This document shows positions 3,552 to 50,768 of a stretch of 64,000 nt of DNA, piece by piece. The notes beneath the pieces were generated by a model. The model was not told the origin of the DNA. It was given only the letters and a program-made list of their open reading frames with translations, and did not search any database. Positions within the stretch are counted from its first letter, which is position 1, and every line of letters starts with the position of its first letter. A program made the position numbers and the translations under genes. The stretch is taken from positions 124,001-188,000 of the IMG/VR virus record IMGVR_UViG_3300017991_000001. One strand, given 5' to 3'.

Positions 3552-4364
3552 ATGCCCACAATCCATTTTCTTGCCGGGCTGCCCCGCAGCGGCTCCACGC
3601 TGCTGATGAACATCCTGGCCCAGAACCCGGACATCCATCCCACGACCACGTCCCCGCTTCCCGAGGCGCTGGTGCGCGCCCGGAACAGCTGGCAGGATAT
3701 CGGGGCGTACAGTGCCAACCCGGACCACCGGGCACGGGACGGAGCGCTCAAGGGGTTGCTGCAGGGGTATTACGCCCACGTCGAGGAACCCGTGGTGATC
3801 GACAAGCACCGCGGGTGGCCGTCCCACATCGAACTGCTCGAACACCTGACGCAGTGCGACGTCAAGATCATTTGCACGGTGCGCTGCATCGTGGACATCC
3901 TTTCGTCGATGGAGAAGCTGTACCGCGCCAACAAGGCGGTGCGACGCCCCGAGGGTGAGGGCCAGGCAGCCGGGCAGTACCTGTCGGTGAAGGGGCGCGC
4001 CAACGTGTGGATGGGCGAAGTCGGGGTGATCGGCTCGGCTTACCTGAACATGCAGGACGCCTGTGCGCGCGGGTACCGGGACCGCCTCCACTTCGTGGAA
4101 TACGGCAACCTGACGAAGTTCCCCGACAAAACCCTCAAGAAGGTCTACAAGTTTCTGGGGATGGAACCCTACGACAGCCATGACTTCGTGAACGTGGAGC
4201 AGACCACGCAGGAGAACGACTACTTCCACGGTTTCGAGGACCTGCACACGATCCGACCCACCGTGGCCCACCAGCACAGCGACGCGACGGAGGTGCTGGG
4301 AGAGGAACTTGTGGCCCTGTACAGCAAGCCCGGCGCCCAGTTCTGGCGTGCTCCGGGCTTCTAA
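3552..4364 (+). CDS. Sulfotransferase-family protein
   Basis: PAPS-binding loop GLPRSGSTLL, DKHRGW, VRCIVDILSS, LHFVEYGNLTKFP. Confidence 0.85.
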   Translation: MPTIHFLAGLPRSGSTLLMNILAQNPDIHPTTTSPLPEALVRARNSWQDIGAYSANPDHRARDGALKGLLQGYYAHVEEPVVIDKHRGWPSHIELLEHLTQCDVKIICTVRCIVDILSSMEKLYRANKAVRRPEGEGQAAGQYLSVKGRANVWMGEVGVIGSAYLNMQDACARGYRDRLHFVEYGNLTKFPDKTLKKVYKFLGMEPYDSHDFVNVEQTTQENDYFHGFEDLHTIRPTVAHQHSDATEVLGEELVALYSKPGAQFWRAPGF

Positions 4365-6684: not shown

Positions 6685-7557
6685 ATGGGTGAATTCGCGA
6701 AACGGGCCGCCGAGGTCCTGGAGCCGTGGGAGCTGGAGCTGGAGCGCCAGCAGAAGAAGCTCTACAAGAAGATCCCGTCCTCCAAGGAAGAGGCCACCAC
6801 TTCGGCGATCAACCGCATCAACGAGCTGCGCCAGAAGAGCTACATGGCCGGCTACCTGATGAGGCATCTGCGTAGCGAGGAAGAGGAAACCAAGCGCCTG
6901 CTGCCGGAGGACTCGGTGGGCGTGCCCGGCAGGGAGATCTCCCTGGCGCTCCCTGAGAAGAAGGCTGGTGCGCTGGACGCGTTGACGCGCCCGCTGCGCG
7001 AGACGGCCGAAGACCTCAAGATGCACGCCTCCCAACGCATCGACGAGGAGAAGGAACGGCTCACACGCACCACGTCCGATCCCGGCACGCTGCCCTGGTA
7101 CTACCCCATGATGGCGCTGACCGCCCCCAACGCCTTCGCCGAGGGGTTCCGCAAGGCGGAGAAGGACATCGACGCCGAGGAGCTGGCCCGCATCAACGAG
7201 CGGCTCGTCAAAGCCAAGGCCGAGTTCGAGAAGGCGCTCGAGGAGGAGTACAGCCAGTCGGGCAGCTTGAAGGTCAGCAGCGCCCGGCCTCAAAGCGCCG
7301 GCGAGATGATCGACGGGCTGGCGCAGATGCATGTCAAGTGCGCCGAGGGTGAGCTCAACCAGATCCTGGGCACCTACCTGGCGCTGGCCGCGCTGCTGGG
7401 TCAGGGCGCGCACATGACGGCCAAGGAATGGGCCGAGAAGCGCGACCCGAAGAGACAGAAGCTGAAACTCGTGCGCGAGGCCGTGCGCCAGCGCATGCGT
7501 TCGTACATGCCACCCATCCGGGTGGAGGCCGGGGAACCTGGACTGGCCATAAGCTGA
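6685..7557 (+). CDS. Helical putative virion protein
   Basis: RBS GAGGTG; AKRAA, EKKA, VKCA motifs; coiled-coil character. Confidence 0.6.
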   Translation: MGEFAKRAAEVLEPWELELERQQKKLYKKIPSSKEEATTSAINRINELRQKSYMAGYLMRHLRSEEEETKRLLPEDSVGVPGREISLALPEKKAGALDALTRPLRETAEDLKMHASQRIDEEKERLTRTTSDPGTLPWYYPMMALTAPNAFAEGFRKAEKDIDAEELARINERLVKAKAEFEKALEEEYSQSGSLKVSSARPQSAGEMIDGLAQMHVKCAEGELNQILGTYLALAALLGQGAHMTAKEWAEKRDPKRQKLKLVREAVRQRMRSYMPPIRVEAGEPGLAIS

Positions 7558-7571
7558 CACGGGGTCCTCAC

Positions 7572-10500
7572 ATGCCTGAAGCCCTTCTCAATGACACGCT
7601 GAGCGCGCCGGTCAAACCAAAACCGGCCGTCACGCATCGCACGTTCGACGACGTGGACACCATGCGCGGCTCCATCTTCGACGGGGTGCTCGACGCCGTG
7701 GCCAAGAAGTACCCGGTCGAGAACACCCGCTATCGCATGGAAGTGGCTGATCTGGGCTACGGCAAGGACAAGCCTTACTCCCTGGAAGACCAGAAAAAAG
7801 CGATCATGACGGGCCAGACGATGACCCGTCAGCTGTCCGGCACCTGGCGCCTGGTCGATAAGGAGTCGGGCAAGGTCGTCGATTCAAAGAAGGCCGTGAT
7901 CGCACACGTGCCCTATGTCACGCCTCGGGGCACCTTCATCTACCGCGGCAACGAGTACACCATCTCCAACCAGATGCGCCTCAAGCCCGGGGTCTACTCC
8001 CGCGTCAAGGACAACGGCATGATCGAGGCCCACTTCAACGTGGCGCCCGGCACCGGCCCGTCCTTCCGCATGTACATGGAGCCGGACACCGGCATCTTCC
8101 GCCTGGCCGTGGGCCAGTCGACGCTGAAGATGTACCCGATCCTGAAGGCCATGGGCGTGCCCGACCGCGAGATCGAGCAGATCTGGGGAAAGGAGCTCCT
8201 GCAGAAGAACACCGAGGCGGCCGACCCGCGCGCCGTCTCCCGCGCCTTCGCCAAGCTGGTGGCGACCCGCGCGGACCAGCCGGGCATCGACGCCGACCGG
8301 GAAGGGCTGGCCAAAGTCGCCCAGTTCACCCAGGTGGACAACGACCTGGTCGTGGGGCCTTCGCGGGTCCACGGCAACGGCTTGTACACGCAGCAGCCCG
8401 TCCCGGCCGGCACGCGCGTCACGCCGGCCTACATCCGCATCGGCATGACCGGCGACACCGAGGCCGACTTCGTGCGTTCCGGGCCGGCGCTGTGGGTCAA
8501 TCACCAGCCCGACGACATGGCCAACACGGTCACGGCCGTAGCACCCGACGGGCGCATGGCCAACCTGATCGCCACCCGCGACATCGAGCCGTGGGAGGAG
8601 ATCACCTGCGACTACGCCAAGAACCACGACACGCTGACGGACTGGGTCAAGCAGCTGTACGACATGGACGAGATGGAGGCCGAGAGGTCGATCTCCAAGA
8701 TCGCCATGTCGAAGACGGCGGCCAAGATCCCGACCGTGGCCGTGGACCTGGACGGCACGCTGGCCGAGATGTACGAGTCCTTCGATCCCAAGAAGATCCC
8801 CGACCCCCGCCCCGGCGCGCGCAAGGCCATGAAGAAGTTCCAGGACAAGGGCTACCGGGTCCTGATCCACACCGTGCGGGGCGACGACCAGCTGACCAAG
8901 GACTGGTTGCACAAGCACGACATCCCCTACGACTACGTCAACGAGAACCCGGACCAGCCCGACACTGCATCCGACAAGCTGATCGCCGACGCCTACGTGG
9001 ACGACCGCGGCGTGCAGGGTGCGCAGGCCTGGCACAAGATCGAGCAACAGGTCTCCGCCAAGCTGGAGAAGGAAGCCAAGATCGGTTTCAAGGACCAGGA
9101 GATGCGGTGGACGAAGTTGTGGTTCCACGGCACCGTGCGGGCCCAGCGCCAGGGCAACGACGGCAAACCGTGGGTCTATGTCCAGGTCCACAAGGGGCTT
9201 ATGGACGCTGCTCGGGACAGCCTCGCCAATGAAGGCGTGGACATCGAGAAGAACCCCAACGACCCGCACATCACGCTTCTGCGCTCCAGCGAAGCCCAGG
9301 AGCTGATCGACCGGCACGGCGAGGAGCAGTGGAAGGGCGCGGCCAAGGACGGCAAGTCCATACGCTTCGCGCTCAGGCGCATGATGTCCCTGATCCCGGA
9401 CGGGTGGGACGGCGTGGACCGGGTCTGGTTCATCGAGGTGGAGAGCCCGGACTTGAAGAAGTACCGGCGCGATCTGGGTTTTCCCGAGCTGCCCATCGGC
9501 GACAACGGCAACGAGCACCGCTTCCACATCACCTTTGCCATCCACCGCTCCAAGAACGAGCCCAAGCGCGCGGCGTACCTGCTTTCCGGTGCCGGCATCG
9601 GAATCGTGGAGCGCGCCTTTGAGAAGGCCGCCGGGGCCACCGACCAGGGCATCGAGCTCAACCAGGTCTTCGACCGCATGGAGCTGGACCCTGACGTGAC
9701 CAAGTCCACGGTCGGTGAGGGCTTCAAGAACGCCGGCATCCCGACGCTGCTCAGGGTCAGCCAGAAGCTCCTGAACATTTCAAAGGGGATGGAGGACACC
9801 GACGACCGGGACTCGCTGGCCTACCAGAAGCTGTACGGTCCCGAGGACTTCTTCACCGAGCGCGTGAACCGCGACGCCGGCCAGACCGGCCGGAAGCTGT
9901 TGTGGCGCGCCACGCTGCGGGGCAACCTGAAACACGTGCCTACGGGGGCGCTTTCCGGGCAAATGTTCGGCGTGCTGCTGAGAAGCGGCATGGGGATGAG
10001 TCTCGAAGAGACCAACCCCATGGACATCATGGACCAGAACCTCCGCGTGATCCGCCTGGGCGAGGGCGGCATTCCGTCGCTGGACTCGGTGCCGGAGGAG
10101 AGCCGAAACGTCCAGCCCAGCCACTTCGCCTACCTGGACCCGATCAGAAGCCCGGAGAGCGAGAAGATCGGCGTGGACTCGCGCGTGTCCCATCGCGTGA
10201 TGAAGGGTTCCGACGGGCAGTTCCACGCGCCCATGTTCAACCCGAAGACAGGCAAGGAGGAGATGGTCTCCGCGGCAAAGGCGGCCGAGTCGGTGGTGGC
10301 CTTTCCGGGCGAGCTGAACAAGAAGCGCGGCAAGGTCAGGGCCATGGTCAAGTCCAGGCAGGTCCAGTACGTGGACCGCAAGGACGTGGACTACGAGGTC
10401 GAAGACCCCAACCAGATGTTCACGCTCAGCTCCAACCTGGTTCCCCTGGTGTCGGGCATCAAGGGCGGGCGCCTGCTGATGGGCGCCAAGTACTTCACCC

Positions 10501-13500
10501 AGGCGCTGCCCCTGCGCGAGCGGGAGGCCCCGCTGGTCCGCAACCTGGAGAGGAGCGGCAAGTCCTTTGACGAGCTGTACGGGGACCGGGTGGGTGCCAT
10601 ACGCGCGCAGGCTCCGGGTGTGGTGACCTCGATGAACAAGAACGGCATCAAGGTCAAGTACGCCGACGGGACCACCAAGGAGCATGAGCTGTATCGCAAC
10701 TTCCCCTTCAACCGGAAGAGCCTGACCGGGGATTGCGAGGTGCTGATCAAGCGTAACGGCGAACTCCTTGTTACGCGACTGGACGCCTACGAATTCGAGC
10801 AGGGGGACCTGACGCTGTCGATCGACCCTGAAACGAAGTTGTCCGCATGGATGGAGGTAACTGGCTATACGCGTCACGAGTGTGACAAGCGCCTGTACCG
10901 GGTCAAAACGGATTCAGGCAGAGCCTTCACAATAACTGAGGATCACAGCTTGATGGTGATGGGCCCTGAAGGCGATCTCGTCCCCGCTTACCCAAGCGCT
11001 TGCGTCGTTGGGCACACGCGCATACCCGTGGCGCTGCCTCGTTTTGAAGGGTGTCGCGGATTTTTCGGCGAGGACAAGCTGGGAACGTTGACCGGCCTGT
11101 ACCTGGCGGAAGGACATATTCCTCAGAACCAGCCCAATCTCATCATCATAGCGGTTGCGCCGGAAGAGCGGGCAGACGAGGTAATGCGGCTGTTTCGCGA
11201 ACTTGGCTGCAAACCTTTCAGGAACGGCGGTTCCGTGTGCGCTACCGATGCTGATTTGAGCAAGTTTCTCATAAAGAACTGCGGACACCTTTCGCACGGC
11301 AAGTTTATCGGCCGACAGCTGATGAATGCCAACATGTCGTTCAAACAGGCTCTGTTACAAGGCTATTTGGCCGGCGACGGCAACTTGTGGGCGGACAGAA
11401 ACGGCACTGTTCAGCTCACGGCAGTGACCGTATCCAAACGTCTTCGCGACGATCTGGTCGTTCTCGCGGGCACTTTGGGAGTCTTCACGACGCTTTTCGA
11501 CGTACCCCGTGACAACGAGGCATGGCGTGACGGCTACGGGCTGCGCTTCCCGAACAAGGAATTGAAGCGGACGCGGTGGATGTTCTACGAGGACCGTCAA
11601 CGCCTGCTCGACGCGTTGGTTAGGGAGAACACGCGCGCGTCCAAGTTTGACGTGGTTCCGGTGCCACGGGAAGCGCGTAAAGCCTTGTATGGCGAGTTGG
11701 AAACTGTGCCGCATTTCGTCTACAAAACGGTTAACAAGGGCTACGTGGCGAAACACAGAGTGCGTACGGGGTCTGGTGTTTTTGGAAAGTGGGGCGCCTC
11801 CGACGTGTCCTGGGACCGGATCAAGTCGATTACGGAGGTGCCCAGCGAGGAATATGTTTATGACCTGTCCGTGGCGGCATCCGAGGCTTTTGCGGTAAAC
11901 GGCGGCGTCGTTGTCCACAACACGTTCATCCACAACACCCCGACCGTTAAGATCGGGGACCGGGTCCGCAAGGGGCAGTTGCTGGCCACCAGCAACTACA
12001 CGGACGACCAGGGCGCGCTGGCGCTGGGCACCAACCTGCGCACCGCCTACGTGCCCTACAAGGGCCTCAACTTCGAGGACGCCATTGTCATCTCCGAGTC
12101 GGCGGCCAAGCGGCTCTCCAGCGAGCACATGTACCAGCACACGCTCGACAAGGAGGACGACACGGTCACGGGGCGCAAGCAGTTCGTCTCGATCTACCCG
12201 ACGACCTTCAACCGCAAGCAGCTAGGCGCGCTGGACGAGCGCGGCGTGGCCAAGGTGGGCACCACCATCAAGTACGGCGACCCCGTGGTGCTGTCCATGC
12301 GCAAGAACCAACCCTCGGCCGTGCATCGGGGCCGCAAGCCCATGTACACCGACACCTCCATCACCTGGGATCACGAGTCCCCGGGCATGGTGACCGGCGT
12401 GGACGAGACGGACGACGGCGGCTTCAACGTGACGGTGAAGGCCTACATGCCGGCACAGGAGGGGGACAAGCTGGCCGGCCGCTACGGCGACAAGGGCGTG
12501 ATCTCCAAGGTCGTGCCCGACGACCAGATGATGCACGACCGGGACGGCAAGCCCTACGAGATCCTGCTCAACCCGTTGGGCATCATCACGCGCGGCAACC
12601 CCTCCCAGGTGTACGAGACGCTGCTGGGCAAGGTGGCCCGCAAGCGGGGCAAGCCCATTAGTGTGCCGGGCTTCATGGACGAGAGCATGGTGGACTACGT
12701 GCGGAAGGAGCTCAGCCGGGAGCGGATGAAGTCGCATGAGGACCTCTACGACCCGACCACCAACCGCAAGGTGCCGGACATCCTGACCGGGGACCGCTTC
12801 ATCTTCAAGCTGCACCACACCGCCGAGTCCAAGGGCAAGGGCCGCGACGTGGGCGCCTACACCTCCGAGGGCATCCCGGCCAAGGGCGGCGAGTTGGGCT
12901 CAAAGCGGGTCAGCAACATGGAGCAGAACGCCCTGCTGTCCCATGGCGCGACCGGCGTGCTGCGCGACGCCCAGGTGGTCAGGGGCCAGCGCAACGACGA
13001 CTTCTGGCGGGCCTTCAGGATGGGCTACACGCCCCCCTCGCCGAGCGTGCCCATGGTCTACGACAAGTTCCTCAACCACCTGCGCGGCGCCGGCATCAAC
13101 GTCAAGAAGAACGGCGACCGGACGCAGCTGCTGGCCATGACCGACAAGGACGTGGACGAGATGACCAGCGGGGAGATCACCGAGGCCAAGACGGTGGACT
13201 CCGACACGCTCAAGGAGATCGACGGTGGGCTGTTCGATCGCGGGCTCACCGGAGGGCACGGGGGCAGCCGCTGGAGCCATATAAAACTGGCCGAACCCAT
13301 GCCCAATCCCGTGATGGAAGAGCCCATTCGTCGCATGTTGGGCCTGACCAAGGTCAAGTTCGAGGAGGTCCTGCAGGGCAAGGAGGACATCGGCGGCGAG
13401 ACGGGCACCAAGGCCATCGGGGCGGCGCTGAAGCGCATCAACCTGGACGAGGCCATCGACAACGCCAAGCTGATCATCAAGGACGGCGCGAAGTCCAAGC

Positions 13501-14504
13501 GGGACAACGCGGTCAAGACGCTGGGCTACTACGAGACGCTCAAGAAGGCCGGGATGAAGCCCAGCGACCTGATGCTCTCCAAGGTGCCGGTGCTGCCGCC
13601 GTCCATGCGCCCGATCACCCAGTACCGGTCCATGCAGCTCTCGGCCGACCCGAACTTCCTGTACCGGGACCTGATCAACGCCAACACGGACCTCAAGGAG
13701 ATCTCGTCCGAGCTGGGCCGCAGGCACGGCGGCAGGGCGCGGTTGCGCACCTACCACGCCTTCAAGGCCGTGACCGGCCTGGGCGACCCCGTGCAGGCCA
13801 AGACCCAGGAGAAGCGGGTCAAGGGTCTCCTGGCCCACGTCTTCGGCTCCAGCCCGAAGTTCGGGATGTTCCAGCGCCGGGTGCTGGGCAGCCCCGTGGA
13901 CGTGGTGGGCCGGGCGGCGATCACGCCCAACCCGAGCCTGAGCATGGACCAGGTGGGCATCCCCGAGGACAAGGTCTGGACGATCTACCGGCCCTTCGTG
14001 GTCCGGCGCCTGATCCGCCGCGGCATGCCGGCGATGGACGCGGCCAAGGCTGCGGCCAACCGCACGGAGGTGGCGGCCAACGCGCTGCAGGAGGAGATTT
14101 CCACGCGGCCCGTTCTGATCAACCGCGCGCCCACGCTGCACCGCTACGGGTTCATGGCGGCCTGGCCGGTGCTGACCAAGGGCAAGACCCTGCAGGTCTC
14201 CCCGACCACGGTGGGCGGCTTCAACGCGGACTTCGACGGCGACGCGATGAACTACCACGTGCCGGTGACCGACGAGGCCGTCGCTGACGCGGTGGACAAG
14301 ATGCTGCCCAGCAAGAACCTGAAGTCCGCGAGGTTCTTCAAGACCCATTACGTGCCCGTCAACGAGTTCCTGATGGGCCTGTACCTGGCCAGTACGGCCA
14401 AGAGCGACAAGCCGTTACGGGTGTTCCGGGACAAGAAGGACGTGCTGGCTGCCTACCAGCGCGGGGACATCGGCCTGGGAGACCGTGTTTCCATAAGGAG
14501 CTGA
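7572..14504 (+). CDS. Phage multi-subunit RNA polymerase: beta fused to the N-terminal half of beta', with SET/HAD/2H insertion and an intein
   Basis: beta motifs GTFIYRGNEYTISNQMRLKPGVYS, GLNFEDAIVISE, GDKLAGRYGDKG, LNPLGIITRGN; beta' motifs PVLPPSMRP, NRAPTLHR and catalytic FNADFDGDAM; ATG 7572 follows the previous stop. Confidence 0.95.
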   Translation: MPEALLNDTLSAPVKPKPAVTHRTFDDVDTMRGSIFDGVLDAVAKKYPVENTRYRMEVADLGYGKDKPYSLEDQKKAIMTGQTMTRQLSGTWRLVDKESGKVVDSKKAVIAHVPYVTPRGTFIYRGNEYTISNQMRLKPGVYSRVKDNGMIEAHFNVAPGTGPSFRMYMEPDTGIFRLAVGQSTLKMYPILKAMGVPDREIEQIWGKELLQKNTEAADPRAVSRAFAKLVATRADQPGIDADREGLAKVAQFTQVDNDLVVGPSRVHGNGLYTQQPVPAGTRVTPAYIRIGMTGDTEADFVRSGPALWVNHQPDDMANTVTAVAPDGRMANLIATRDIEPWEEITCDYAKNHDTLTDWVKQLYDMDEMEAERSISKIAMSKTAAKIPTVAVDLDGTLAEMYESFDPKKIPDPRPGARKAMKKFQDKGYRVLIHTVRGDDQLTKDWLHKHDIPYDYVNENPDQPDTASDKLIADAYVDDRGVQGAQAWHKIEQQVSAKLEKEAKIGFKDQEMRWTKLWFHGTVRAQRQGNDGKPWVYVQVHKGLMDAARDSLANEGVDIEKNPNDPHITLLRSSEAQELIDRHGEEQWKGAAKDGKSIRFALRRMMSLIPDGWDGVDRVWFIEVESPDLKKYRRDLGFPELPIGDNGNEHRFHITFAIHRSKNEPKRAAYLLSGAGIGIVERAFEKAAGATDQGIELNQVFDRMELDPDVTKSTVGEGFKNAGIPTLLRVSQKLLNISKGMEDTDDRDSLAYQKLYGPEDFFTERVNRDAGQTGRKLLWRATLRGNLKHVPTGALSGQMFGVLLRSGMGMSLEETNPMDIMDQNLRVIRLGEGGIPSLDSVPEESRNVQPSHFAYLDPIRSPESEKIGVDSRVSHRVMKGSDGQFHAPMFNPKTGKEEMVSAAKAAESVVAFPGELNKKRGKVRAMVKSRQVQYVDRKDVDYEVEDPNQMFTLSSNLVPLVSGIKGGRLLMGAKYFTQALPLREREAPLVRNLERSGKSFDELYGDRVGAIRAQAPGVVTSMNKNGIKVKYADGTTKEHELYRNFPFNRKSLTGDCEVLIKRNGELLVTRLDAYEFEQGDLTLSIDPETKLSAWMEVTGYTRHECDKRLYRVKTDSGRAFTITEDHSLMVMGPEGDLVPAYPSACVVGHTRIPVALPRFEGCRGFFGEDKLGTLTGLYLAEGHIPQNQPNLIIIAVAPEERADEVMRLFRELGCKPFRNGGSVCATDADLSKFLIKNCGHLSHGKFIGRQLMNANMSFKQALLQGYLAGDGNLWADRNGTVQLTAVTVSKRLRDDLVVLAGTLGVFTTLFDVPRDNEAWRDGYGLRFPNKELKRTRWMFYEDRQRLLDALVRENTRASKFDVVPVPREARKALYGELETVPHFVYKTVNKGYVAKHRVRTGSGVFGKWGASDVSWDRIKSITEVPSEEYVYDLSVAASEAFAVNGGVVVHNTFIHNTPTVKIGDRVRKGQLLATSNYTDDQGALALGTNLRTAYVPYKGLNFEDAIVISESAAKRLSSEHMYQHTLDKEDDTVTGRKQFVSIYPTTFNRKQLGALDERGVAKVGTTIKYGDPVVLSMRKNQPSAVHRGRKPMYTDTSITWDHESPGMVTGVDETDDGGFNVTVKAYMPAQEGDKLAGRYGDKGVISKVVPDDQMMHDRDGKPYEILLNPLGIITRGNPSQVYETLLGKVARKRGKPISVPGFMDESMVDYVRKELSRERMKSHEDLYDPTTNRKVPDILTGDRFIFKLHHTAESKGKGRDVGAYTSEGIPAKGGELGSKRVSNMEQNALLSHGATGVLRDAQVVRGQRNDDFWRAFRMGYTPPSPSVPMVYDKFLNHLRGAGINVKKNGDRTQLLAMTDKDVDEMTSGEITEAKTVDSDTLKEIDGGLFDRGLTGGHGGSRWSHIKLAEPMPNPVMEEPIRRMLGLTKVKFEEVLQGKEDIGGETGTKAIGAALKRINLDEAIDNAKLIIKDGAKSKRDNAVKTLGYYETLKKAGMKPSDLMLSKVPVLPPSMRPITQYRSMQLSADPNFLYRDLINANTDLKEISSELGRRHGGRARLRTYHAFKAVTGLGDPVQAKTQEKRVKGLLAHVFGSSPKFGMFQRRVLGSPVDVVGRAAITPNPSLSMDQVGIPEDKVWTIYRPFVVRRLIRRGMPAMDAAKAAANRTEVAANALQEEISTRPVLINRAPTLHRYGFMAAWPVLTKGKTLQVSPTTVGGFNADFDGDAMNYHVPVTDEAVADAVDKMLPSKNLKSARFFKTHYVPVNEFLMGLYLASTAKSDKPLRVFRDKKDVLAAYQRGDIGLGDRVSIRS
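8346..8615 (+). other. SET domain inserted in RNAP beta
   Basis: PSRVHGNGLYT (GxG), WVNHQPDDMAN (NH motif), IATRDIEPWEEITCDY (EExxxDY). Confidence 0.85.
8727..9053 (+). other. HAD-superfamily phosphatase domain inserted in RNAP beta
   Basis: Motif I VAVDLDGTL, motif II IHTVR, YVNENP, motifs III/IV KLIADAYVDDR. Confidence 0.85.
9078..9551 (+). other. 2H phosphoesterase domain inserted in RNAP beta
   Basis: Two HxT motifs, PHITLL (9267) and FHITFA (9525), with intervening VWFIEVESPDLKKYRRDLG. Confidence 0.8.
10719..11921 (+). mobile_element. Intein (401 aa) with LAGLIDADG homing endonuclease in RNAP beta
   Basis: Starts SLTGDCEVLI, ends YVYDLSVAASEAFAVNGGVVVHN before Thr; LGTLTGLYLAEGH and LLQGYLAGDGN motifs; shifted codon usage; removal restores FPFNRK-TFIHNTPTVKIGDRVRKGQLLA. 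Confidence 0.93.
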
Positions 14505-14529
14505 CAAACAACGTATCGGACCCTATAAT
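14501..14529 (+). promoter_or_regulatory. Sigma70-like promoter
   Basis: CTGACA-N17-TATAAT overlapping the RNAP stop codon, 30 nt before ORF 14560. Confidence 0.65.
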
Positions 14530-14559: not shown

Positions 14560-15186
14560 ATGTCCGCGTCCAAAGGTGTTGCCAAGAAGGTGCTGCCCAA
14601 GCCGAAAGGCAAGGAGGGGAAGATTCTCGTGACCACGCCCAAGCCCGACAAGGTTTCCGTACAGGCGGTCAAGACGTCCGCGCTGCGCCGAGCAGAGATC
14701 CTCAGCCTGATCACCAAGGAAGGTTTCGGCTTTGCCACGAAGGAGGGTAGCGCTGCCAAGGGGCTCGTGAACGCTGCCGGCAAGCTGCGCTCCGGGGCTC
14801 GAAAGGGCCTCAAGTCTTACGGCAAACTGGTCGGTAGCAAGACGAAGCCCGGAATTGCTACAGACAAGGAACGGAAGTTGTTCAACAAGGCCAAGAAGAA
14901 GGGCGTCAAGAGCAAGAAAGGCGCCAAGGCTCTCGATAAGTTCAAGCGCGAGGCTTCCAAGAAGACCGTGAAGCACTTGAACCGTTCGCAGAAATTCTTC
15001 GGAAAGCTGAAGGACGACAAAGGCAATCGCATTAAACTCAGCTCCGCTCAGCTGTTGGGCCACTTCCTGAAAAGGGCGCTGACCAAGCAGGGTTCGGAGC
15101 AGATCATCAAGCAGGCTTCGGACCGCGAACGGGCGGCCCGTGTGCTTTCAGCCGTCCACAAGGCGGCACGCAGCTATGGACGCTAA
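14560..15186 (+). CDS. Very Lys-rich basic protein, possibly DNA-binding/internal head protein
   Basis: RBS GGGAG; dense Lys content; IIKQA motif. Confidence 0.65.
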   Translation: MSASKGVAKKVLPKPKGKEGKILVTTPKPDKVSVQAVKTSALRRAEILSLITKEGFGFATKEGSAAKGLVNAAGKLRSGARKGLKSYGKLVGSKTKPGIATDKERKLFNKAKKKGVKSKKGAKALDKFKREASKKTVKHLNRSQKFFGKLKDDKGNRIKLSSAQLLGHFLKRALTKQGSEQIIKQASDRERAARVLSAVHKAARSYGR

Positions 15187-15388
15187 GGCGTACCTCATCA
15201 AGCAGGCGCTGGGGATGAGTGGCCTCCAGATGCAGATGGAGATGCCCTTTTCACCACCCCGGCCCGTGGCGCACATGGACACGCTGGAGGACCGCCGTAC
15301 CCGGGAAAAGATGCTGGCGGACCTGCCGCCATCCAGACGTGAGGGGATCTTAAGGGCCATACAGGCCAGAATGAGGGCCAGACGATGA
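15176..15388 (+). CDS. Small protein with AYLIKQA leader
   Basis: Begins MDAKAYLIKQALG; overlaps both neighbours. Confidence 0.6.
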   Translation: MDAKAYLIKQALGMSGLQMQMEMPFSPPRPVAHMDTLEDRRTREKMLADLPPSRREGILRAIQARMRARR

Positions 15389-16167
15389 ACAGACTCAACC
15401 CGCAACTGATCAAGCTGGCACGCGGCGCGATCCGCAAGGCGGAGAAGACGGCTGCCAAGAAGGAAGCCTTCGTGCCCATGTCACCCGCCGGTGCGGCTCC
15501 CGCACCTCCGGGTGCGCCCATGCCGCCTCCACCGGCAGGCGCGCCAGCGGCCCCCATGCCGCCCGATCCCATGATGGCCGGCGCCATGCCGGCTGACCCC
15601 ATGGCTGCAGGTGGGGCACCGCCGGCTGAAGGCGCGCCCATGGACCCGGCGGCTGCCGGTGCCGGCGGCGAGACCATGACGGTTGCGCTGCCCGACCTGA
15701 TCCAACTCTTCACCATGATCGCCCAGCAGGGCGGCGCAGGCGGAGCGCCCGCTCCCGCGCCCGCCGAAGGCGGCGGTGGCGAAGGCGGCGCCGAGCCCGA
15801 GAAGAAGCCCAGCGCGGCGGCGGGCAAGGACGCCAAGATCGACATGATCCTGTCCAAGCTGGACCAGCTGATCGGGGCGCTGGGCATGGCCGACATGATG
15901 GCGCCCGCCGAGGGCGGGGCAGCCATGCCTCCCGCAGAGACGGGGATGGAAGGCGAAAACGCCCTGGCTCCCGCCGAAGGCGGCATGGCTCCCGAAGCAC
16001 CCATCCCGGCGATCGATGCCGGCGGCGCGGCACCGCCCCCGCCCACGGGTGGCATGATGGTGGCTGCCGCGGAGGGCGAGAAGAAGGCATCCGGCAACGG
16101 CAACGTATCCAGGGCGAAGATGCTCAGCCGCATTTGCAGCAACCTGAGGAGTGGCCAGCGACGCTGA
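15385..16167 (+). CDS. Pro/Ala/Met-rich low-complexity putative head protein
   Basis: MNRLNPQLIKLAR, EKTAAKKEA, EKKAS motifs. Confidence 0.65.
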   Translation: MNRLNPQLIKLARGAIRKAEKTAAKKEAFVPMSPAGAAPAPPGAPMPPPPAGAPAAPMPPDPMMAGAMPADPMAAGGAPPAEGAPMDPAAAGAGGETMTVALPDLIQLFTMIAQQGGAGGAPAPAPAEGGGGEGGAEPEKKPSAAAGKDAKIDMILSKLDQLIGALGMADMMAPAEGGAAMPPAETGMEGENALAPAEGGMAPEAPIPAIDAGGAAPPPPTGGMMVAAAEGEKKASGNGNVSRAKMLSRICSNLRSGQRR

Positions 16168-18261: not shown

Positions 18262-20100
18262 ATGGAAACGACGGTTGGACAGCTCCTGCTGAACGAGGCC
18301 TTGCCCGAGGACATGCGCGACTACCGCCGTGTCATCGACAAGAAGTCCCTCGCGCCGCTGTTCACCGAACTGGCCGAGAAGCACCCCGACCACTACGCCG
18401 AGATCAACCAGCGCCTCCACACCCTGGCCGCCGACGCGGTGACGGGGCACGGCGGCGTGACCAGCCTCACGCTCGACTCGCTGCGCACGCCGCTGGGCAT
18501 CGAGCGCGCCCGCAAGGAACTGCAAAAGAAGATCGACAAGGTGCTGGACGGACCCGGCACCCAGGAACAGAAGAATGAAAGAATCGTGGGACTGATCTCC
18601 GACGCGCTGGAGCCCGTCACGCAGGAGAATTACAAAGAGAACCTGGCGGCCGACAACCCGCTGGCCGTGCAGGTTTCCTCCGGCAGCCGGGGCAACCCCG
18701 CCGGCCTGCGCTCCCTGACAGCAGGGGATCTGCTTTTCACGGACCACAAGGACCGCCCGATCCCGGTGCCGGTCCTTACGTCTTTCTCGGAAGGGTTGGA
18801 CCCCGTGCAGTACTGGGCCGGCGCGTACACGGCCCGCAAGGGCACCATCGCCACCAAGTTTGCCACCCCCAAGTCGGGGTTCCTGGGCAAGCAGCTCGCG
18901 GCGGCCTCCCACCGCCTGGTGGTCACCGAAAAGGATTGCGGCACGCCCAACGGCCTCGTGGTGGACGCTCACGACCCGGACAACGAGGGGGCCGTGCTGG
19001 CTTCGGACGCTGGCGCGTTCAAACGCGGCGAGGTGCTGGACCCCAATAACATGCGCAAGCTGAAGGACCAGATCGTGGTGCGTTCGCCCATGACCTGCCA
19101 GGCGGAGAACGGCATCTGCCAGCAGTGCGCCGGGGTGCGCGAGCGAGGCGGCTTCCCGCCTATCGGCGACAACGTCGGGATGGCCGCCGCACACGCCATC
19201 TCCGAACCCATCGGGCAGGGTCAGCTGAACGTCAAACACGGCGGCGGGAAGCTGAAAAAGCGCGACGAGGCCAAGACGGGCATCGACCTGATCAACCAAC
19301 TCGTGCAGGTTCCCAAGACTTTTGCCGGGGCTGCTGCGATATCAACCGTTGACGGTCGAGTCGAGCGGGTGGAGAATGCTCCACAAGGCGGCCAGTACAT
19401 TCGGATTGCGGGTACCGAACATTGGGTGCCGGCAGGCGAGGACCTGGTTGTCAAGCGTGGGGACAAGGTGGAGGCCGGGGACGTCCTTTCCAGCGGCATC
19501 CCGAACCCGGCCGAGATCACGCGCTTCAAGGGGATCGGGGAGGGCCGGCGGTACTTCATGGAGATGTTCCGCAAGACGCTGGAGGAGAACCGCTTCAAGG
19601 CGCACCGGCGCAACGTGGAACTGCTCTCCAGGGGCCTGATCAACCACGTCAGGGTGACGGATCTGGACGGACCGGCGGACACCCTGCCCGACGACGTGGC
19701 CGAGTACGACGACATCGTGCGCGGATATCAGGCCCGTTATGGCTCCAAAACGGTTGCCCCGAAGCGTGCCCTTGGGTTATACCTGGAACGTCCCGCACTG
19801 CACTATTCGATCGGGACGCGCGTCACGCCCCGCGTGGCCAAGAGTTTGCAGGACCACGGCGTAGAAAATGTGCTGGCCCATGCCGACGAACCAAGCTTCG
19901 TACCGGAGATGACACGGGCGATGGAAACCCTCTCACACTCCAGCGACTGGATGGTGCGATTGGGCGGTTTCCATTTGAAAAAGTCCTTAATGGGGGCGTT
20001 GCACCGTGGACGAGAGTCCAAGGAGCACGGCACCTCATTCATCCCTCCACTCGCGAAGGGCGTCGAGTTCGGCAAGCCAAAAGGCGACGTCGGATACTGA
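18262..20100 (+). CDS. RNA polymerase beta' C-terminal half
   Basis: SGSRGN, SFSEGL, bridge helix ARKGTIATKFATPKSGFLGKQL, Zn site KDCGT...RSPMTCQAENGICQQC, trigger loop AAAHAISEPIGQGQLNVKHGG. Confidence 0.93.
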   Translation: METTVGQLLLNEALPEDMRDYRRVIDKKSLAPLFTELAEKHPDHYAEINQRLHTLAADAVTGHGGVTSLTLDSLRTPLGIERARKELQKKIDKVLDGPGTQEQKNERIVGLISDALEPVTQENYKENLAADNPLAVQVSSGSRGNPAGLRSLTAGDLLFTDHKDRPIPVPVLTSFSEGLDPVQYWAGAYTARKGTIATKFATPKSGFLGKQLAAASHRLVVTEKDCGTPNGLVVDAHDPDNEGAVLASDAGAFKRGEVLDPNNMRKLKDQIVVRSPMTCQAENGICQQCAGVRERGGFPPIGDNVGMAAAHAISEPIGQGQLNVKHGGGKLKKRDEAKTGIDLINQLVQVPKTFAGAAAISTVDGRVERVENAPQGGQYIRIAGTEHWVPAGEDLVVKRGDKVEAGDVLSSGIPNPAEITRFKGIGEGRRYFMEMFRKTLEENRFKAHRRNVELLSRGLINHVRVTDLDGPADTLPDDVAEYDDIVRGYQARYGSKTVAPKRALGLYLERPALHYSIGTRVTPRVAKSLQDHGVENVLAHADEPSFVPEMTRAMETLSHSSDWMVRLGGFHLKKSLMGALHRGRESKEHGTSFIPPLAKGVEFGKPKGDVGY

Positions 20101-48434: not shown

Positions 48435-50070
48435 AAACTTCTACCGCGTCGATGTGCAGGTGCGGGCCGAGATCGGCGGGCAATCCGTGCCCGTGAACAG
48501 CGTCTCCGTGCGCTACTCGATCGACCGTATACCGGAAGCCGCTATTACCATACCAGTGGGCCGCTCAGCGCGCGGGGACGCCGTACACGTGGGTGCGGGT
48601 GTTTTCGGCACGCTGCCTCCCTTTACGTCCATGCGTATCTACGCGCTTGCTGAGGCGACGCCCGCCGGTCGCGACGCTCCGCGAAAAGGAGGATTGCCGC
48701 AAGGGGAGTTCCTTCTGTTCGATGGGTACGTGTCCGCGCCGTCCATGCATCTCGATGTTTCAGGCGGCATGGGCAGTGCCACGCTCCGTGTACAAGGTTT
48801 TGGAAGGCTGGGCGGCTTGGCTGGAGCAACCACGCTGGGCGTGGGCGTGACCTTGAACAAGCCTCCGGGCGGTACGGACGTGTTTATGAGTAGTTTTGGT
48901 CAGAACGAGAAGAACAACCACCTGACGATTACTGACCAGCTCATGAAGAAGGGGTATTACAGAGACATCGGTGAAGCCGTTTTGGAACTGTTTGACGACG
49001 CGCTGAACGTGACCAGCGTTTGGGCCCACGATCAGCCGGGTTCGGCCAACGCTGGAGCTGCCGCGGACCGTGCCCACGCGAGTCTGGTGTCGGGCGCCAG
49101 CTTCGACCTGCTCAAGCGCGCGTCTCAGGTCAATCAGCAGGCGTTCGGACGCATGGTGGCGGAAACATTAGCGAATGTTTTCTGGGGCGTGTGGTCGGGC
49201 GTCGACAAAGCTGGAAACTTCTCGCCCAGCGCGGGCGGCGATTTGTGGGAAGTGATGCAGAAGCTCCAAGGCGTTTTCTACTTCCACGTCGTACCCACGG
49301 CGGCCACGGATTACATGGCGCCGATTACCCCCAACCTTGGCGGCGACCCGAACAACCTCTTCCCGGCCGGTGAATATTCCATCATAGGCGGGGGTGAGGA
49401 TTTCTTTGAAGGAGGGGGCGCCCGTTACATGTACGCCTATATCACACAGGTGGGTTTGGCGGCGTCGAGTTTCCAATCCTCTCCGTGGAATGACGGTTCG
49501 TCGGTAACCGGGCGCGTAGGGTACGCGAACTTGTCGTTGGGCGATGAAGACTTCGTGTTGGACGGTGGGCGCATCTTCATGTGCGGTTCACCGCCGTGGC
49601 TCATACCTGCCGGTTCACAAGCCAAGGACACACTGAATCCGTTCAAGGGCATCAGCGACGCGGCAGGTTCCGGCGGTTGGTTTAGCAGTGGCAAGCGGGC
49701 GTCGGAAATCGCCATGTTCGGTTCAACGCTGGGTGACCGTGTCGCCAGAACCATCCTGCATGAGCTGGTCTTTGAGCACCGTAAGCTTGCCGTTGCCGGC
49801 CGCCTGCGCACGGACGTGGCACCCGGCAACATCGTACGAGTTACGCTGCCCGCGGAAGGGTTCATCGGTCAACCCGGTGACAACCTGTATGGGATGGCAA
49901 GCGATGTTATCCTGAGGATTATGACTCAGGAAGGCGGCAGTTTGGCGCGAACGGAGGTGGGCATTTCGCACCTGCGCACCGAAAGCGAGCACGAACGCCT
50001 CACGTTGGACGAACACCCCGTATACGGGGAGACTTGGTCGGGCGTGCCGTTAGTCGTGGAGGAGAGCTGA
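48418..50070 (+). CDS. Baseplate hub-like protein
   Basis: N-terminal VNSVSVRYSIDRIPEAAI...LLFDGYV and C-terminal LRTDVAPG..VRV hub-like pattern; atypical codon usage. Confidence 0.5.
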   Translation: MAIRLENFYRVDVQVRAEIGGQSVPVNSVSVRYSIDRIPEAAITIPVGRSARGDAVHVGAGVFGTLPPFTSMRIYALAEATPAGRDAPRKGGLPQGEFLLFDGYVSAPSMHLDVSGGMGSATLRVQGFGRLGGLAGATTLGVGVTLNKPPGGTDVFMSSFGQNEKNNHLTITDQLMKKGYYRDIGEAVLELFDDALNVTSVWAHDQPGSANAGAAADRAHASLVSGASFDLLKRASQVNQQAFGRMVAETLANVFWGVWSGVDKAGNFSPSAGGDLWEVMQKLQGVFYFHVVPTAATDYMAPITPNLGGDPNNLFPAGEYSIIGGGEDFFEGGGARYMYAYITQVGLAASSFQSSPWNDGSSVTGRVGYANLSLGDEDFVLDGGRIFMCGSPPWLIPAGSQAKDTLNPFKGISDAAGSGGWFSSGKRASEIAMFGSTLGDRVARTILHELVFEHRKLAVAGRLRTDVAPGNIVRVTLPAEGFIGQPGDNLYGMASDVILRIMTQEGGSLARTEVGISHLRTESEHERLTLDEHPVYGETWSGVPLVVEES

Positions 50071-50768
50071 TGGACAAGGAATATGAGATCTGGAAGGGCA
50101 AGCCCAGCGACGCGAACTTCGACGCGGTGCTGAAGAAGGCCGACCCCGTCATCAACTCGGCGCTGCAGTCTTACGCTGGCGGGGACAAAGGGCTGCATTC
50201 CAGGGCGAAACTGCTGGCCGCGCGGGCGATCAAGAGCTACGACGCGACCAAGGGGACCAAGCTGCGCACCCACCTGATGACCCAGCTGCAGCCGCTCTCC
50301 CGTACGCACCGCGAGCGCACCCAGGTCGTGCGCGTGCCCGAGCGCGTCACCGCGGACCTCTACAAGATGAGGCAGGAGGAACAGCGCTTCAAGGATCAGT
50401 TCGGCCGCTCGGCCTCCGACAGCGAGCTGTCCTCGGCGACGGGCCTCTCCCGCAAGCGGCTCATGCATGTGCGCAAGTTCGCCCGGGGAGAGATGGCCGA
50501 GTCGGGCCTGGTGGGGGACGAGGGCGAGATCCTGTACCCCGGCGTGTCCAAGCCGGACCCCGAGCAGGTGCTGATCGAGTACGTCCACCACGACCTGGAC
50601 CCGATCGACCAGACCATCCTGGAGCATCGCTCCGGCCTGTACGGGAAGCCCGTTTTGAGCAACAATGATATCGCGGCGCGGTTAAGATTATCGCCGGGCG
50701 CCGTATCGCAGCGGGCGGCGAAGATCGCCAAGCGGATCAGCGAGTTGCGTGACCAGGGGGTCGCCTGA
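50070..50768 (+). CDS. Sigma70-family RNA polymerase sigma factor
   Basis: Region 2 AARAIKSYDATKGTKLRTHL; region 3 VRVPER...FGRSASDSELSSATGLS; region 4 HTH SNNDIAARLRLSPGAVSQR. Confidence 0.85.
   Translation: MDKEYEIWKGKPSDANFDAVLKKADPVINSALQSYAGGDKGLHSRAKLLAARAIKSYDATKGTKLRTHLMTQLQPLSRTHRERTQVVRVPERVTADLYKMRQEEQRFKDQFGRSASDSELSSATGLSRKRLMHVRKFARGEMAESGLVGDEGEILYPGVSKPDPEQVLIEYVHHDLDPIDQTILEHRSGLYGKPVLSNNDIAARLRLSPGAVSQRAAKIAKRISELRDQGVA

What the first reader, a model, noticed from the sequence alone, without database searches (positions are those of the whole stretch)
9078..9551. 2H phosphoesterase passenger: possible pre-loaded anti-defence nuclease
Seen: two intact HxT motifs. Established: the T4 2H protein Acb1 degrades CBASS cyclic nucleotides, while other 2H enzymes process RNA 2',3'-cyclic phosphates. 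Inference: delivery at injection would allow signal degradation before phage gene expression; RNA end repair is the alternative role.
Basis: partly seen in the sequence, partly recalled or inferred. Interest (0 to 1): 0.7.

Follow-up and report, generated by a model that had tools for sequence, protein, structure and literature searches.

The report
Phosphoesterase domain built into phage RNA polymerase
The flagged stretch is a real, intact 2H phosphoesterase domain, but it is not a separate gene: it is a conserved insertion inside the large subunit of a jumbo phage's own RNA polymerase, and what it cleaves is still unknown.

Summary
Window 9078-9551 encodes residues 503-660 of a 2310-aa protein (7572-14504, +). 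It has two H-I-T motifs (H566, H652), a Pfam 2H-SAK score above threshold, a confident 2H-fold model, and both histidines invariant in 43 homologues.

The context changes the reading. The host protein is the phage's only multisubunit RNA polymerase, a fused beta plus N-terminal beta' subunit. The 2H domain lies in a ~437-aa insertion (SET, HAD phosphatase, 2H) in the beta lobe, a site that is bare in the nearest cultured relative, Salmonella phage Arash.

All ~25 metagenomic RNAPs of this clade carry the 2H at that site. SET and HAD come and go.

The nearest non-RNAP relatives are N-terminal domains of phage "polyvalent"-type multidomain proteins.

Delivery at injection is plausible: Arash's RNAP is the protein with most spectra in its virion proteome. 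It is not shown for this phage.

The domain is not an Acb1-family member. Fold scores do not separate Acb1, LigT, Usb1 or viral 2'-5' phosphodiesterases.

I slightly favour healing of 2',3'-cyclic-phosphate RNA ends over Acb1-like signal degradation. I found no description of this architecture in the papers I could search.

The parts
7572..14504 (+). Gene for a 2310-aa fused RNA polymerase subunit: beta plus the N-terminal half of beta', including NADFDGD. The ORF is open from 7428; the called start is the ATG at 7572.
   Evidence: Pfam Rpb2 domains 2/3/6 and Rpb1 domains 1/2. Gene call of 2310 aa on independent contigs. It is the only beta/beta' set in the 211-kb genome.
8331..9641 (+). Lineage-specific insertion of ~437 aa (residues ~254-690) in the beta2 lobe, made of SET + HAD + 2H.
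   Evidence: In the pairwise alignment with Arash gp206, P0001 39-253 matches gp206 26-248 and P0001 691-1054 matches gp206 235-608. The flanks align to E. coli beta 57-218 and 422 onward.
8340..8640 (+). SET-domain methyltransferase module, with NH..(D)..N and EITCDY motifs. It is a variable part of the insertion.
   Evidence: Pfam SET 25.6 bits, above the threshold of 22.4. Among homologous RNAPs it is present only in P0002, P0003, P0005 and P0011.
8727..9071 (+). Small capless HAD phosphatase with DLDGT motif I and a YVDD motif. It is a variable part of the insertion.
   Evidence: Pfam LNS2 29.5 bits and HAD_PNKP 19.3 bits. PHROG matches to polynucleotide-kinase families. NCBIfam BT0820 HAD, E 1e-13. 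It is 42-60% identical to HAD domains of non-RNAP polyvalent proteins, including portal/MuF fusions.
9078..9551 (+). 2H-SAK phosphoesterase domain, the finding itself. Catalytic H566 at 9267-9269 with T568 at 9273-9275; H652 at 9525-9527 with T654 at 9531-9533.
10734..11921 (+). Intein with a LAGLIDADG homing-endonuclease domain (C1055 to N1450, +1 residue T1451), interrupting beta.
   Evidence: Pfam Intein_splicing 55 bits and LAGLIDADG_3 35.6 bits. Boundaries read from the sequence. Absent from most homologues.
18262..20100 (+). Gene for the C-terminal half of beta' (612 aa).
   Evidence: Pfam Rpb1 domain 5. PHROG RNAP families. Homologue of Arash gp216.
50034..50768 (+). Divergent sigma-70-family factor, the probable specificity subunit of the phage RNAP.
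   Evidence: Homologue of Arash gp10. Weak NCBIfam RpoD/SigA matches, E 2e-11.

Best explanation
**What it is.** Residues 503-660 of the phage's fused beta/beta'-N RNA polymerase subunit form a catalytically competent 2H (double HxT) phosphoesterase of the 2H-SAK family. The domain is the fixed core of a lineage-specific insertion in the beta2 lobe, at about the place of E. coli beta SI1. It has been inherited vertically with the polymerase across a clade of uncultured large phages, while the neighbouring SET and HAD-phosphatase modules are gained and lost.

**How it most likely works (inferred).** Because the domain is covalently part of the RNAP, it goes wherever the RNAP goes: probably into the capsid and into the cell with the DNA, then onto the phage template. 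There it would act as a metal-independent phosphodiesterase on 2',3'-cyclic-phosphate or 2'-5' linkages.

**Most likely job (about 0.4 of the probability).** It heals RNA ends cut by host metal-independent RNases such as anticodon nucleases or HEPN effectors. The steps would be:
1. The 2H opens the cyclic phosphate.
2. The adjacent PNKP-like HAD, or the phage's LigD-type 3'-phosphoesterase, removes the monoester.
3. A P-loop kinase and the ligase domain finish the repair.

**What is shown and what is inferred.** Shown: the domain's identity, its intact catalytic motifs, the insertion site, its conservation and its relatives. Inferred: the substrate, virion packaging and the repair pathway.
For: **Identity and integrity.** Pfam 2H-SAK scores above threshold. 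Both His are invariant, as are G, P, W, W and R columns, in 43 sequences. The model has pLDDT 87. The nearest AFDB fold clusters are named Swiss Army Knife 2H, E 1e-10 to 1e-3. All 50 solved-structure matches shown by VIA are 2H enzymes.

**Integral to the RNAP.**
- Every fused beta-beta' homologue carries the 2H directly before the conserved middle of beta. Where beta is split, the split lies just upstream of the 2H.
- 2H identity tracks RNAP-core identity (Pearson 0.95).
- The RNAP-embedded 2H domains cluster in one clade (SH-aLRT 96-99).
- The insertion is clean relative to Arash gp206 and lies in the beta lobe.

**Repair reading.**
- The flanking HAD matches PNKP-type phosphatases.
- Standalone relatives fuse the 2H to a LigD 3'-phosphoesterase plus ligase (P0073, P0069).
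- This genome encodes a LigD_N-ligase protein 9 kb upstream and an AAA_33 kinase.
- Two of three related 2H-RNAP contigs also carry LigD_N plus a ligase-like domain.
- The SAK domains are described as RNA-end-processing modules (PMC7824862, PMC9503650).

**Delivery.** Arash gp206 and gp216 dominate that phage's virion proteome. This phage shares terminase, portal, sigma and baseplate genes with Arash.
Against: - No biochemical data exist for any 2H-SAK member that I could find.
- The HAD is absent from about half of the clade's RNAPs, while the 2H is always present. The 2H therefore cannot depend on that partner.
- No RtcB or clear Rnl-type RNA ligase is present. The only ligase is DNA-ligase-like.
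- The putative repair genes are scattered, not an operon.
- Iyer et al. 2017 noted that the 2H domains of polyvalent proteins are not linked to RNA ligases, and favoured an RNase or signal-degrading role (PMC5512222).
- The repair model does not explain why a repair enzyme should be welded into the RNAP lobe.
- Packaging rests on one proteome of a relative with 33% identity. That proteome also listed many non-structural enzymes.
Confidence: 0.42

Rival explanations
1. Pre-loaded, Acb1-like signal degrader. The RNAP is packaged and injected, and its 2H domain hydrolyses cyclic di- or oligonucleotide alarm signals (CBASS, type III CRISPR) or 2'-5'-linked signals before any phage gene is expressed.
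For: - The top solved-structure neighbours are Acb1 (Z 7.6, rmsd 3.0 over 106 residues) and a poxvirus cGAMP phosphodiesterase (Z 7.2).
- The closest non-RNAP relatives are N-terminal domains of phage polyvalent-type proteins carrying InPase, NUDIX, kinase or SET/HAD modules.
- Iyer et al. 2017 predicted that 2H domains of polyvalent proteins counter nucleotide signalling.
- Homologues of the adjacent HAD sit in portal/MuF-fused, head-packaged proteins.
- The RNAP is abundant in Arash virions.
- Precedent from my own knowledge: rotavirus VP3, a core-packaged capping enzyme with a C-terminal 2H domain that degrades 2-5A. It also appears among the structural matches at Z 4.9.
Against: - There is no sequence or profile similarity to Acb1.
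- Acb1 ranks 24th or lower in BFVD, E >= 0.05.
- The Z-scores do not separate Acb1 from LigT-like, ns2, Usb1 or CNPase.
- Strict conservation at a fixed RNAP site is unusual for an accessory anti-defence module, whereas SET and HAD behave like accessories.
- A degrader of diffusible signals gains nothing from being tethered, beyond delivery.
- The ligand-docking attempt gave no result.
Confidence: 0.25
2. Transcription-coupled RNA processing or RNase. The 2H acts on RNA 3' ends at the polymerase. It could work like Usb1, as a 3' exoribonuclease that leaves cyclic phosphates. It could also clear 3'-blocked RNA fragments near the secondary channel or in backtracked complexes. A third option is degradation of host RNA.
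For: - Universal conservation and a fixed position inside the RNAP fit a role tied to transcription itself.
- The insertion site corresponds to the beta-lobe/SI1 region. In E. coli that region borders the secondary channel (my own knowledge).
- Usb1 is among the best structural matches (Z 6.8).
- Iyer et al. 2017 listed an RNase role as one option.
- There is a precedent for an enzymatic domain on a phage RNAP: the HD domain fused to AR9 beta (PMC7824862).
Against: - No direct evidence.
- The lobe is far from the RNA exit channel (my own knowledge), so nascent 5' ends are not nearby.
- Related RNAPs such as Arash's work without any such domain.
- Standalone and polyvalent relatives of the domain exist outside any RNAP.
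Confidence: 0.12
3. Structural filler. The domain is an exapted, non-catalytic lobe insertion, like many lineage-specific RNAP insertions.
For: - Bacterial beta subunits carry non-enzymatic lineage-specific insertions at this region (Lane and Darst 2010, cited in PMC13282480).
- The domain is retained even where its HAD and SET neighbours are lost.
Against: Both catalytic His and the +2 Thr/Ser are invariant across 43 sequences that have diverged to 27-30% identity, as are several probable substrate-contact residues. This is the signature of a maintained active site.
Confidence: 0.05

Closest known systems
2H-SAK domain (Pfam PF22547; "Swiss Army Knife" RNA-repair proteins of Burroughs and Aravind 2016)
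   Same: It scores above the family threshold. The nearest AlphaFold DB fold clusters carry this name. It has the double HxT/S motif and the two-lobed alpha+beta fold. It sits next to a small HAD phosphatase, as in SAK proteins.
   Different: Here the domain is inserted inside an RNA polymerase beta subunit, rather than standing alone or lying at the N-terminus of a repair or polyvalent protein. No member I could find has been assayed.
Phage polyvalent proteins (Iyer et al. 2017, PMC5512222)
   Same: Several enzymatic conflict-type domains (SET, HAD, 2H) are strung on one virus polypeptide. The 2H's nearest non-RNAP relatives are N-terminal domains of multidomain proteins carrying InPase, which that paper lists as a phage-type polyvalent-protein domain. 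The HAD's relatives sit in portal/MuF-fused proteins. That paper already lists 2H, InPase and the N4 virion polymerase as phage-type polyvalent components.
   Different: The scaffold is a multisubunit, bacterial-type RNAP beta subunit, and the domains lie in an internal loop of an essential enzyme. They are not beads on a string that a protease can release. The 2H is fixed rather than shuffled.
Acb1 (phage anti-CBASS 2H nuclease; PDB 7T26/7T27)
   Same: Same superfamily and fold. It is the best solved-structure match by Z (7.6). It is a phage protein.
   Different: Sequence identity is about 15%, with no profile match. Acb1 is a standalone protein of ~140-150 aa made after infection. It ranks below SAK-type and giant-virus proteins among viral models. 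The substrate here is untested.
Rotavirus VP3 C-terminal 2',5'-phosphodiesterase (PDB 5AF2, 6O3V)
   Same: A 2H domain fused to a transcription-associated enzyme that is packaged in the virion core and active at the start of infection. It appears as a structural match at Z 4.9.
   Different: It is from a eukaryotic dsRNA virus. The domain is a C-terminal appendage of a capping enzyme, not an insertion in the polymerase. The relationship is at superfamily level only.
LigT/ThpR RNA 2',3'-cyclic phosphodiesterases and the T4 Pnkp healing module
   Same: The double HxT chemistry is expected to open 2',3'-cyclic phosphates. The pairing with a PNKP-like HAD phosphatase mirrors end-healing enzymes. 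LigT-like structures match at Z 5.8-7.0.
   Different: It scores below threshold for LigT_PEase (17-18 bits against 23.3) and TIGR02258 (16.6 against 65.7). No dedicated RNA ligase lies nearby.
Virion RNA polymerases of jumbo phages (phiKZ/AR9 vRNAP) and the Arash RNAP
   Same: A phage-encoded multisubunit RNAP. Arash's fused beta-beta'N homologue has the most spectra of any protein in its virion proteome. AR9 beta carries a fused HD hydrolase.
   Different: This RNAP is of bacterial type and the genome encodes a sigma-70-like factor. There is one RNAP set rather than the virion and non-virion pair of phiKZ-like phages. Its identity to Arash is only 33%, and Arash lacks the insertion.

Membership tests
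2H phosphoesterase superfamily | Two H-x-T/S motifs, one in each lobe | tested here: met
   H566-I-T568 and H652-I-T654. Both His are invariant in 43 homologues.
2H phosphoesterase superfamily | Two-lobed alpha+beta fold with the motifs on facing strands | tested here: met
   AF2 model with pLDDT 87. All 50 rows shown by VIA-align are 2H enzymes, Z 4.7-7.6. I could not inspect coordinates, so the active-site geometry itself was not measured.
2H phosphoesterase superfamily | Metal-independent hydrolysis of a 2',3'-cyclic, 2'-5' or related phosphodiester | not testable with these tools
   Needs an enzyme assay.
2H-SAK (PF22547) | Score at or above Pfam's gathering threshold (27 bits) | tested here: met
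   32.9 and 35.8 bits on the excised domain; 32.3 bits in the six-frame genome scan; 26.9 bits when the whole 2358-aa ORF is scanned.
2H-SAK (PF22547) | Nearest structural relatives belong to the family | tested here: met
   Many of the AFDB fold clusters at E <= 1e-3 are named Swiss Army Knife 2H. A BFVD SAK-2H model ranks 6th.
Acb1 anti-CBASS nuclease family | Detectable sequence or profile similarity to Acb1 | tested here: not met
   A 43-sequence profile against all PDB sequences (the set searched covers all entries, so 7T26/7T27 too) at E <= 10 found no Acb1. No Acb1-type family appeared in Pfam or NCBIfam scans.
Acb1 anti-CBASS nuclease family | Structure closer to Acb1 than to other 2H families | tested here: inconclusive
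   Acb1 Z 7.6, against 7.2 (pox cGAMP PDE), 7.0 (LigT-like), 6.9 (ns2) and 6.8 (Usb1). In BFVD, Acb1 models rank 24th or lower.
Acb1 anti-CBASS nuclease family | Standalone small protein (~150 aa) | tested here: not met
   It is an internal domain of a 2310-aa RNAP subunit.
Acb1 anti-CBASS nuclease family | Cleaves 3'3'-cGAMP, cA3 and related CBASS signals | not testable with these tools
   The ligand job was not folded. Needs an assay.
LigT/ThpR RNA 2',3'-cyclic phosphodiesterase | Score above the family thresholds (PF02834 23.3 bits; TIGR02258 65.7 bits) | tested here: not met
   17.1-18.2 bits and 16.6 bits.
Phage polyvalent proteins (Iyer 2017) | Two or more conflict-type enzymatic domains in one polypeptide of a phage | tested here: met
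   SET + HAD + 2H within one protein. The same domain types recur together in non-RNAP relatives.
Phage polyvalent proteins (Iyer 2017) | Packaged in the virion and delivered with the DNA | tested here: inconclusive
   Indirect only: the Arash homologue in its virion proteome, and HAD homologues fused to portal/MuF domains.
Bacterial-type multisubunit RNAP beta/beta' | Rpb2 domain 6 and Rpb1 domain 2 with the NADFDGD catalytic loop | tested here: met
   PF00562 at 164.8 bits, PF00623 at 85.5 bits, NADFDGD at residue 2218.

The most novel reading that the evidence does not exclude
The phage RNA polymerase itself serves as an injected effector carrier. A virion-packaged, bacterial-type RNAP would have a beta-lobe insertion that acts as a docking site for enzymatic counter-defence modules: a fixed 2H phosphodiesterase plus interchangeable SET and HAD domains drawn from the same pool as polyvalent proteins. 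Host nucleotide-signal or RNA-targeting immunity would then be disarmed at the site and moment of first transcription, before any phage protein is made.
Probability: 0.2. Interest if true: 0.85.

Novelty: new variant of a known kind. Interest (0 to 1): 0.62.

Why it matters
**A new architecture.** Enzyme domains embedded in the core of a multisubunit RNA polymerase are rare. I found no description of a clade-wide, catalytically intact phosphodiesterase inside the beta lobe, sometimes flanked by a methyltransferase and a phosphatase, in the papers I could search.

**If the RNAP is packaged.** This would be a new route for delivering counter-defence enzymes, a prokaryotic parallel to rotavirus VP3. 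It would also extend the polyvalent-protein idea to an essential enzyme.

**If the domain serves transcription or RNA repair.** It would link RNA-end chemistry directly to a polymerase.

**Either way.** It gives a concrete, assayable entry point to the uncharacterised 2H-SAK family.

Tried and rejected
- **Cultured phages.** Megablast of the gene and tblastn of the 2H domain against 50,697 phage records gave no match. The insertion is therefore absent from the cultured phages held there.
- **Solved structures by sequence.** A profile search of all PDB sequences found nothing usable.
- **Docking.** Complex prediction with 3'3'-cGAMP was not folded by the tool, so it is evidence for nothing.
- **Bacterial and archaeal genomes.** No host could be named.
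- **RNA ligases in this genome.** There is no RtcB. RNA_ligase gave only a sub-threshold hit, which turned out to be a LigD_N plus DNA-ligase-like protein.
- **Sigma factor.** Pfam Sigma70_r2 found none. Homology to Arash gp10 and NCBIfam did find one.
- **Neighbouring genes.** PHROG and Pfam scans of the neighbours were almost all blank, so local context gives little help.
- **Contexts of standalone relatives.** They lie in large one-strand phage contigs with no telling neighbours.
- **Literature.** The Burroughs and Aravind 2016 paper is not held. Nothing was found on "2H-SAK" or the BCSR5 phosphodiesterase.
- **Rejected idea.** I considered that the stretch could be a separate passenger gene or a recent accessory acquisition. 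Conservation, co-divergence and the tree argue against that.
Full report
**What is at the coordinates.**

Window 9078-9551 lies inside one very long ORF, open from 7428 to 14504 on the + strand. Independent gene calls on other contigs start it at the ATG at 7572, which gives a 2310-aa product, P0001. The finding's limits correspond exactly to residues K503-S660.

H-x-[ST] occurs 11 times in this protein, so the tripeptides alone prove little. Three further results make the case:
- The excised segment scores 32.9-35.8 bits on Pfam PF22547, "Swiss Army Knife 2H phosphoesterase" (threshold 27), and only sub-threshold on LigT_PEase.
- In a 43-sequence alignment reaching 27% identity, both histidines are invariant, as are one G, one P, two W and one R column.
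- An AlphaFold2 model built on that alignment has mean pLDDT 87.

Foldseek against the PDB gives only weak E-values, but its high-probability matches are 2H enzymes. In the VIA-align second look all 50 rows shown are 2H enzymes, at Z 4.7-7.6.

**What carries it.**

The window is bases 124001-188000 of a 211,084-bp IMG/VR virus record. The record has direct terminal repeats, ~64% G+C, and nearly all genes on one strand. This is a jumbo phage.

The long ORF is an RNA polymerase subunit. It has Rpb2 domains 2, 3 and 6, followed by Rpb1 domains 1 and 2 with NADFDGD. That is beta fused to the N-terminal half of beta'. The rest of beta' is encoded at 18262-20100. Six-frame family scans find no second beta or beta' set in the genome.

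Besides the 2H, the ORF contains three other modules:
- a SET domain (25.6 bits);
- a small HAD phosphatase with an intact DLDGT motif, which matches LNS2 and PNKP-type phosphatase models and PHROG polynucleotide-kinase families;
- a LAGLIDADG intein at C1055-N1450.

**Where the domain sits in the polymerase.**

The nearest cultured relative is Salmonella phage Arash. Its gp206 is likewise a fused beta-beta'N, 33% identical over the catalytic core.

The pairwise alignment is clean. P0001 39-253 matches gp206 26-248, and P0001 691-1054 matches gp206 235-608. P0001 therefore carries a ~437-residue insertion (about residues 254-690, window 8331-9641) made of SET, HAD and 2H. Arash has nothing at that point.

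Against solved bacterial RNAPs, the flanks align to E. coli beta 57-218 and to 422 onward. This places the insertion in the beta2 lobe, at about the position of the E. coli lineage-specific insertion SI1. From my own knowledge of RNAP structure, that surface faces the downstream DNA and secondary-channel side, not the RNA exit. This is an inference and was not tested here.

**How conserved it is.**

A word-indexed search of 5.8 billion proteins and a full HMMER scan of 1.84 billion representatives recovered about 25 fused beta-beta' proteins from metagenomes.

Mapping P0001's segments onto them gave these results:
- Every one has the 2H directly before the conserved middle of beta.
- HAD is present in about half of them and SET in four.
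- In six of them the polypeptide begins with the 2H. Beta is split there, just upstream of the domain.

Identity in the 2H (40-82%) tracks identity in the catalytic core (57-85%), with Pearson r 0.95. In a quick maximum-likelihood tree of 145 2H domains, 23 RNAP-embedded copies form one clade (SH-aLRT 99). All 25 fall in a 31-row clade (96), apart from 106 non-RNAP copies. The careful tree search did not finish, so this is the quick tree.

The 2H is therefore an old, vertically inherited and selectively maintained part of this polymerase. It is the only 2H domain in the genome. IMG/VR holds four such RNAP loci, on contigs of 65-188 kb. The identical protein was seen on 11 contigs from several samples.

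**Relatives outside polymerases.**

At 27-40% identity, the domain recurs as the N-terminal module of proteins of 170 to more than 1500 aa. I scanned 94 of them. Partner domains were:
- InPase in 12;
- LigD 3'-phosphoesterase in 4, two of them with a ligase OB domain;
- SET in 4;
- the LNS2-type HAD in 3;
- C39-like peptidases, P-loop kinases, NUDIX and SNF2 in a few.

Most have no recognisable partner domain. The four I looked up lie on contigs of 3.5-195 kb. On the three that are 35 kb or longer, all called genes near the gene run in one direction, as in large phage genomes.

The HAD of the insertion is 42-60% identical to HADs in non-RNAP giants. These include proteins with Mu-type portal plus MuF plus ADP-ribosyltransferase, or portal plus ART plus a 2H of another family (P0021, P0022).

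These are the "polyvalent proteins" of Iyer et al. 2017. That paper lists 2H, InPase and the N4 virion polymerase as phage-type components, regards them as packaged and injected, and proposes that their 2H domains act as RNases or as degraders of 2'-5' or cyclic-nucleotide signals (PMC5512222). The beta-lobe insertion thus draws on the same domain pool.

**Is the polymerase delivered at injection?**

This cannot be shown from sequence. In Arash, gp206 gave the most spectra of any protein in the virion proteome (3516, against 1333 for the major capsid protein). gp216 (beta') and the sigma factor gp10 were also detected. However, 116 proteins were listed, including ribonucleotide reductase, and the authors themselves allow carry-over (PMC10585845).

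This phage shares the following with Arash:
- terminase;
- portal, ~10 kb upstream of the RNAP gene;
- both RNAP genes;
- a structural protein;
- the sigma factor (window 50034-50768);
- baseplate genes.

I put packaging at roughly even odds. Near-consensus sigma-70-type promoters are present, for example an 11/12 match at 14501-14529. These could serve either the host RNAP or the phage's own sigma, so they do not settle the matter.

**What the domain does.**

Structure does not resolve the subfamily. Acb1 scores Z 7.6, a poxvirus cGAMP phosphodiesterase 7.2, a LigT-like protein 7.0, coronavirus ns2 6.9, Usb1 6.8, CNPase ~6, E. coli LigT 5.8 and rotavirus VP3 4.9.

By sequence it is not an Acb1. 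There was no profile hit to any PDB sequence and no Acb1-type family hit. Acb1 models rank 24th or lower among viral predicted structures, whereas SAK-2H fold clusters top the AlphaFold DB search.

For RNA-end healing:
- the adjoining PNKP-like HAD;
- fusion of standalone relatives to a LigD 3'-phosphoesterase plus ligase;
- a LigD_N-ligase gene 9 kb upstream in this genome, and in two of three related contigs;
- an AAA_33 kinase elsewhere in the genome;
- the description of SAK modules as RNA-end processors (PMC7824862, PMC9503650).

Against it:
- HAD is dispensable in half the clade.
- There is no RtcB or clear RNA ligase.
- The candidate repair genes are scattered.
- The model does not explain why the enzyme is welded into the polymerase.

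I rank the explanations as follows: RNA-end healing about 0.4, Acb1-like signal degradation about 0.25, a transcription-coupled RNase or 3'-end role about 0.12, a purely structural role about 0.05, and the remainder unknown.

**Novelty.**

The two comparative-genomics papers on jumbo phages and on NAD/ADP-ribose systems, the polyvalent-protein paper and a 2026 review of jumbo phages do not describe a 2H, SET or HAD insertion in a phage RNAP beta subunit. The closest precedent they mention is an HD domain fused to AR9 beta. I class this as a new variant of known kinds: a known domain family and a known enzyme, in a combination and position I did not find described.

Noticed in passing
window 10734-11921 (+): A 396-aa intein with a LAGLIDADG homing-endonuclease domain (C1055...HN1450|T) interrupts the beta part of the RNAP gene. 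Most homologues lack it. Some carry inteins at other sites: beta' in P0015/P0016, beta in P0025/P0032.
   Followed up: partly
window ~8340-8640 (+): A SET-domain methyltransferase with intact NH...N and EITCDY motifs lies inside the RNAP beta lobe. SET also co-occurs with 2H-SAK in 4 of 94 non-RNAP relatives. Its target is unknown.
   Followed up: partly
window ~8727-9071 (+): A capless HAD phosphatase (DLDGT) lies inside the RNAP. It is 42-60% identical to HAD domains of portal/MuF/ART-fused polyvalent proteins from other phages, which suggests recent domain exchange.
   Followed up: partly
window 50034-50768 (+): A divergent sigma-70-family gene, homologous to Arash gp10, sits beside the baseplate genes (Baseplate_J at 52082-53731). 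Pfam Sigma70_r2 missed it.
   Followed up: partly
G000:C1:122271-123815 (L006:877-2421), just upstream of the window: A 514-aa protein with a LigD-type 3'-phosphoesterase plus an ATP-dependent ligase domain. The same pair is fused behind 2H-SAK in some standalone relatives, and sits inside 1200-1300-aa open frames in two related phage contigs.
   Followed up: partly
G000:C1:84112-85053 (L016:1021-1962): A 313-aa protein with a C-terminal AAA_33 P-loop kinase domain and an unassigned 160-aa N-terminus. It is a possible polynucleotide kinase.
   Followed up: no
window 14501-14529 (+): A near-consensus sigma-70-type promoter (CTGACA-17-TATAAT, 11/12) overlaps the stop codon of the RNAP gene, upstream of the next ORF. 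Six such sites occur in the first 20 kb, against 2.3 expected.
   Followed up: no
window 3552-4364 (+): A sulfotransferase-family gene (Pfam Sulfotransfer_3, E 9e-17) lies in the gene array between the portal and RNAP genes.
   Followed up: no
window 14560-18252: The 3.76 kb between the two RNAP genes has lower G+C (~0.61). It holds ORFs with no family match, including one directly abutting the beta'-C gene. Whether any of them is a missing RNAP piece was not examined.
   Followed up: no
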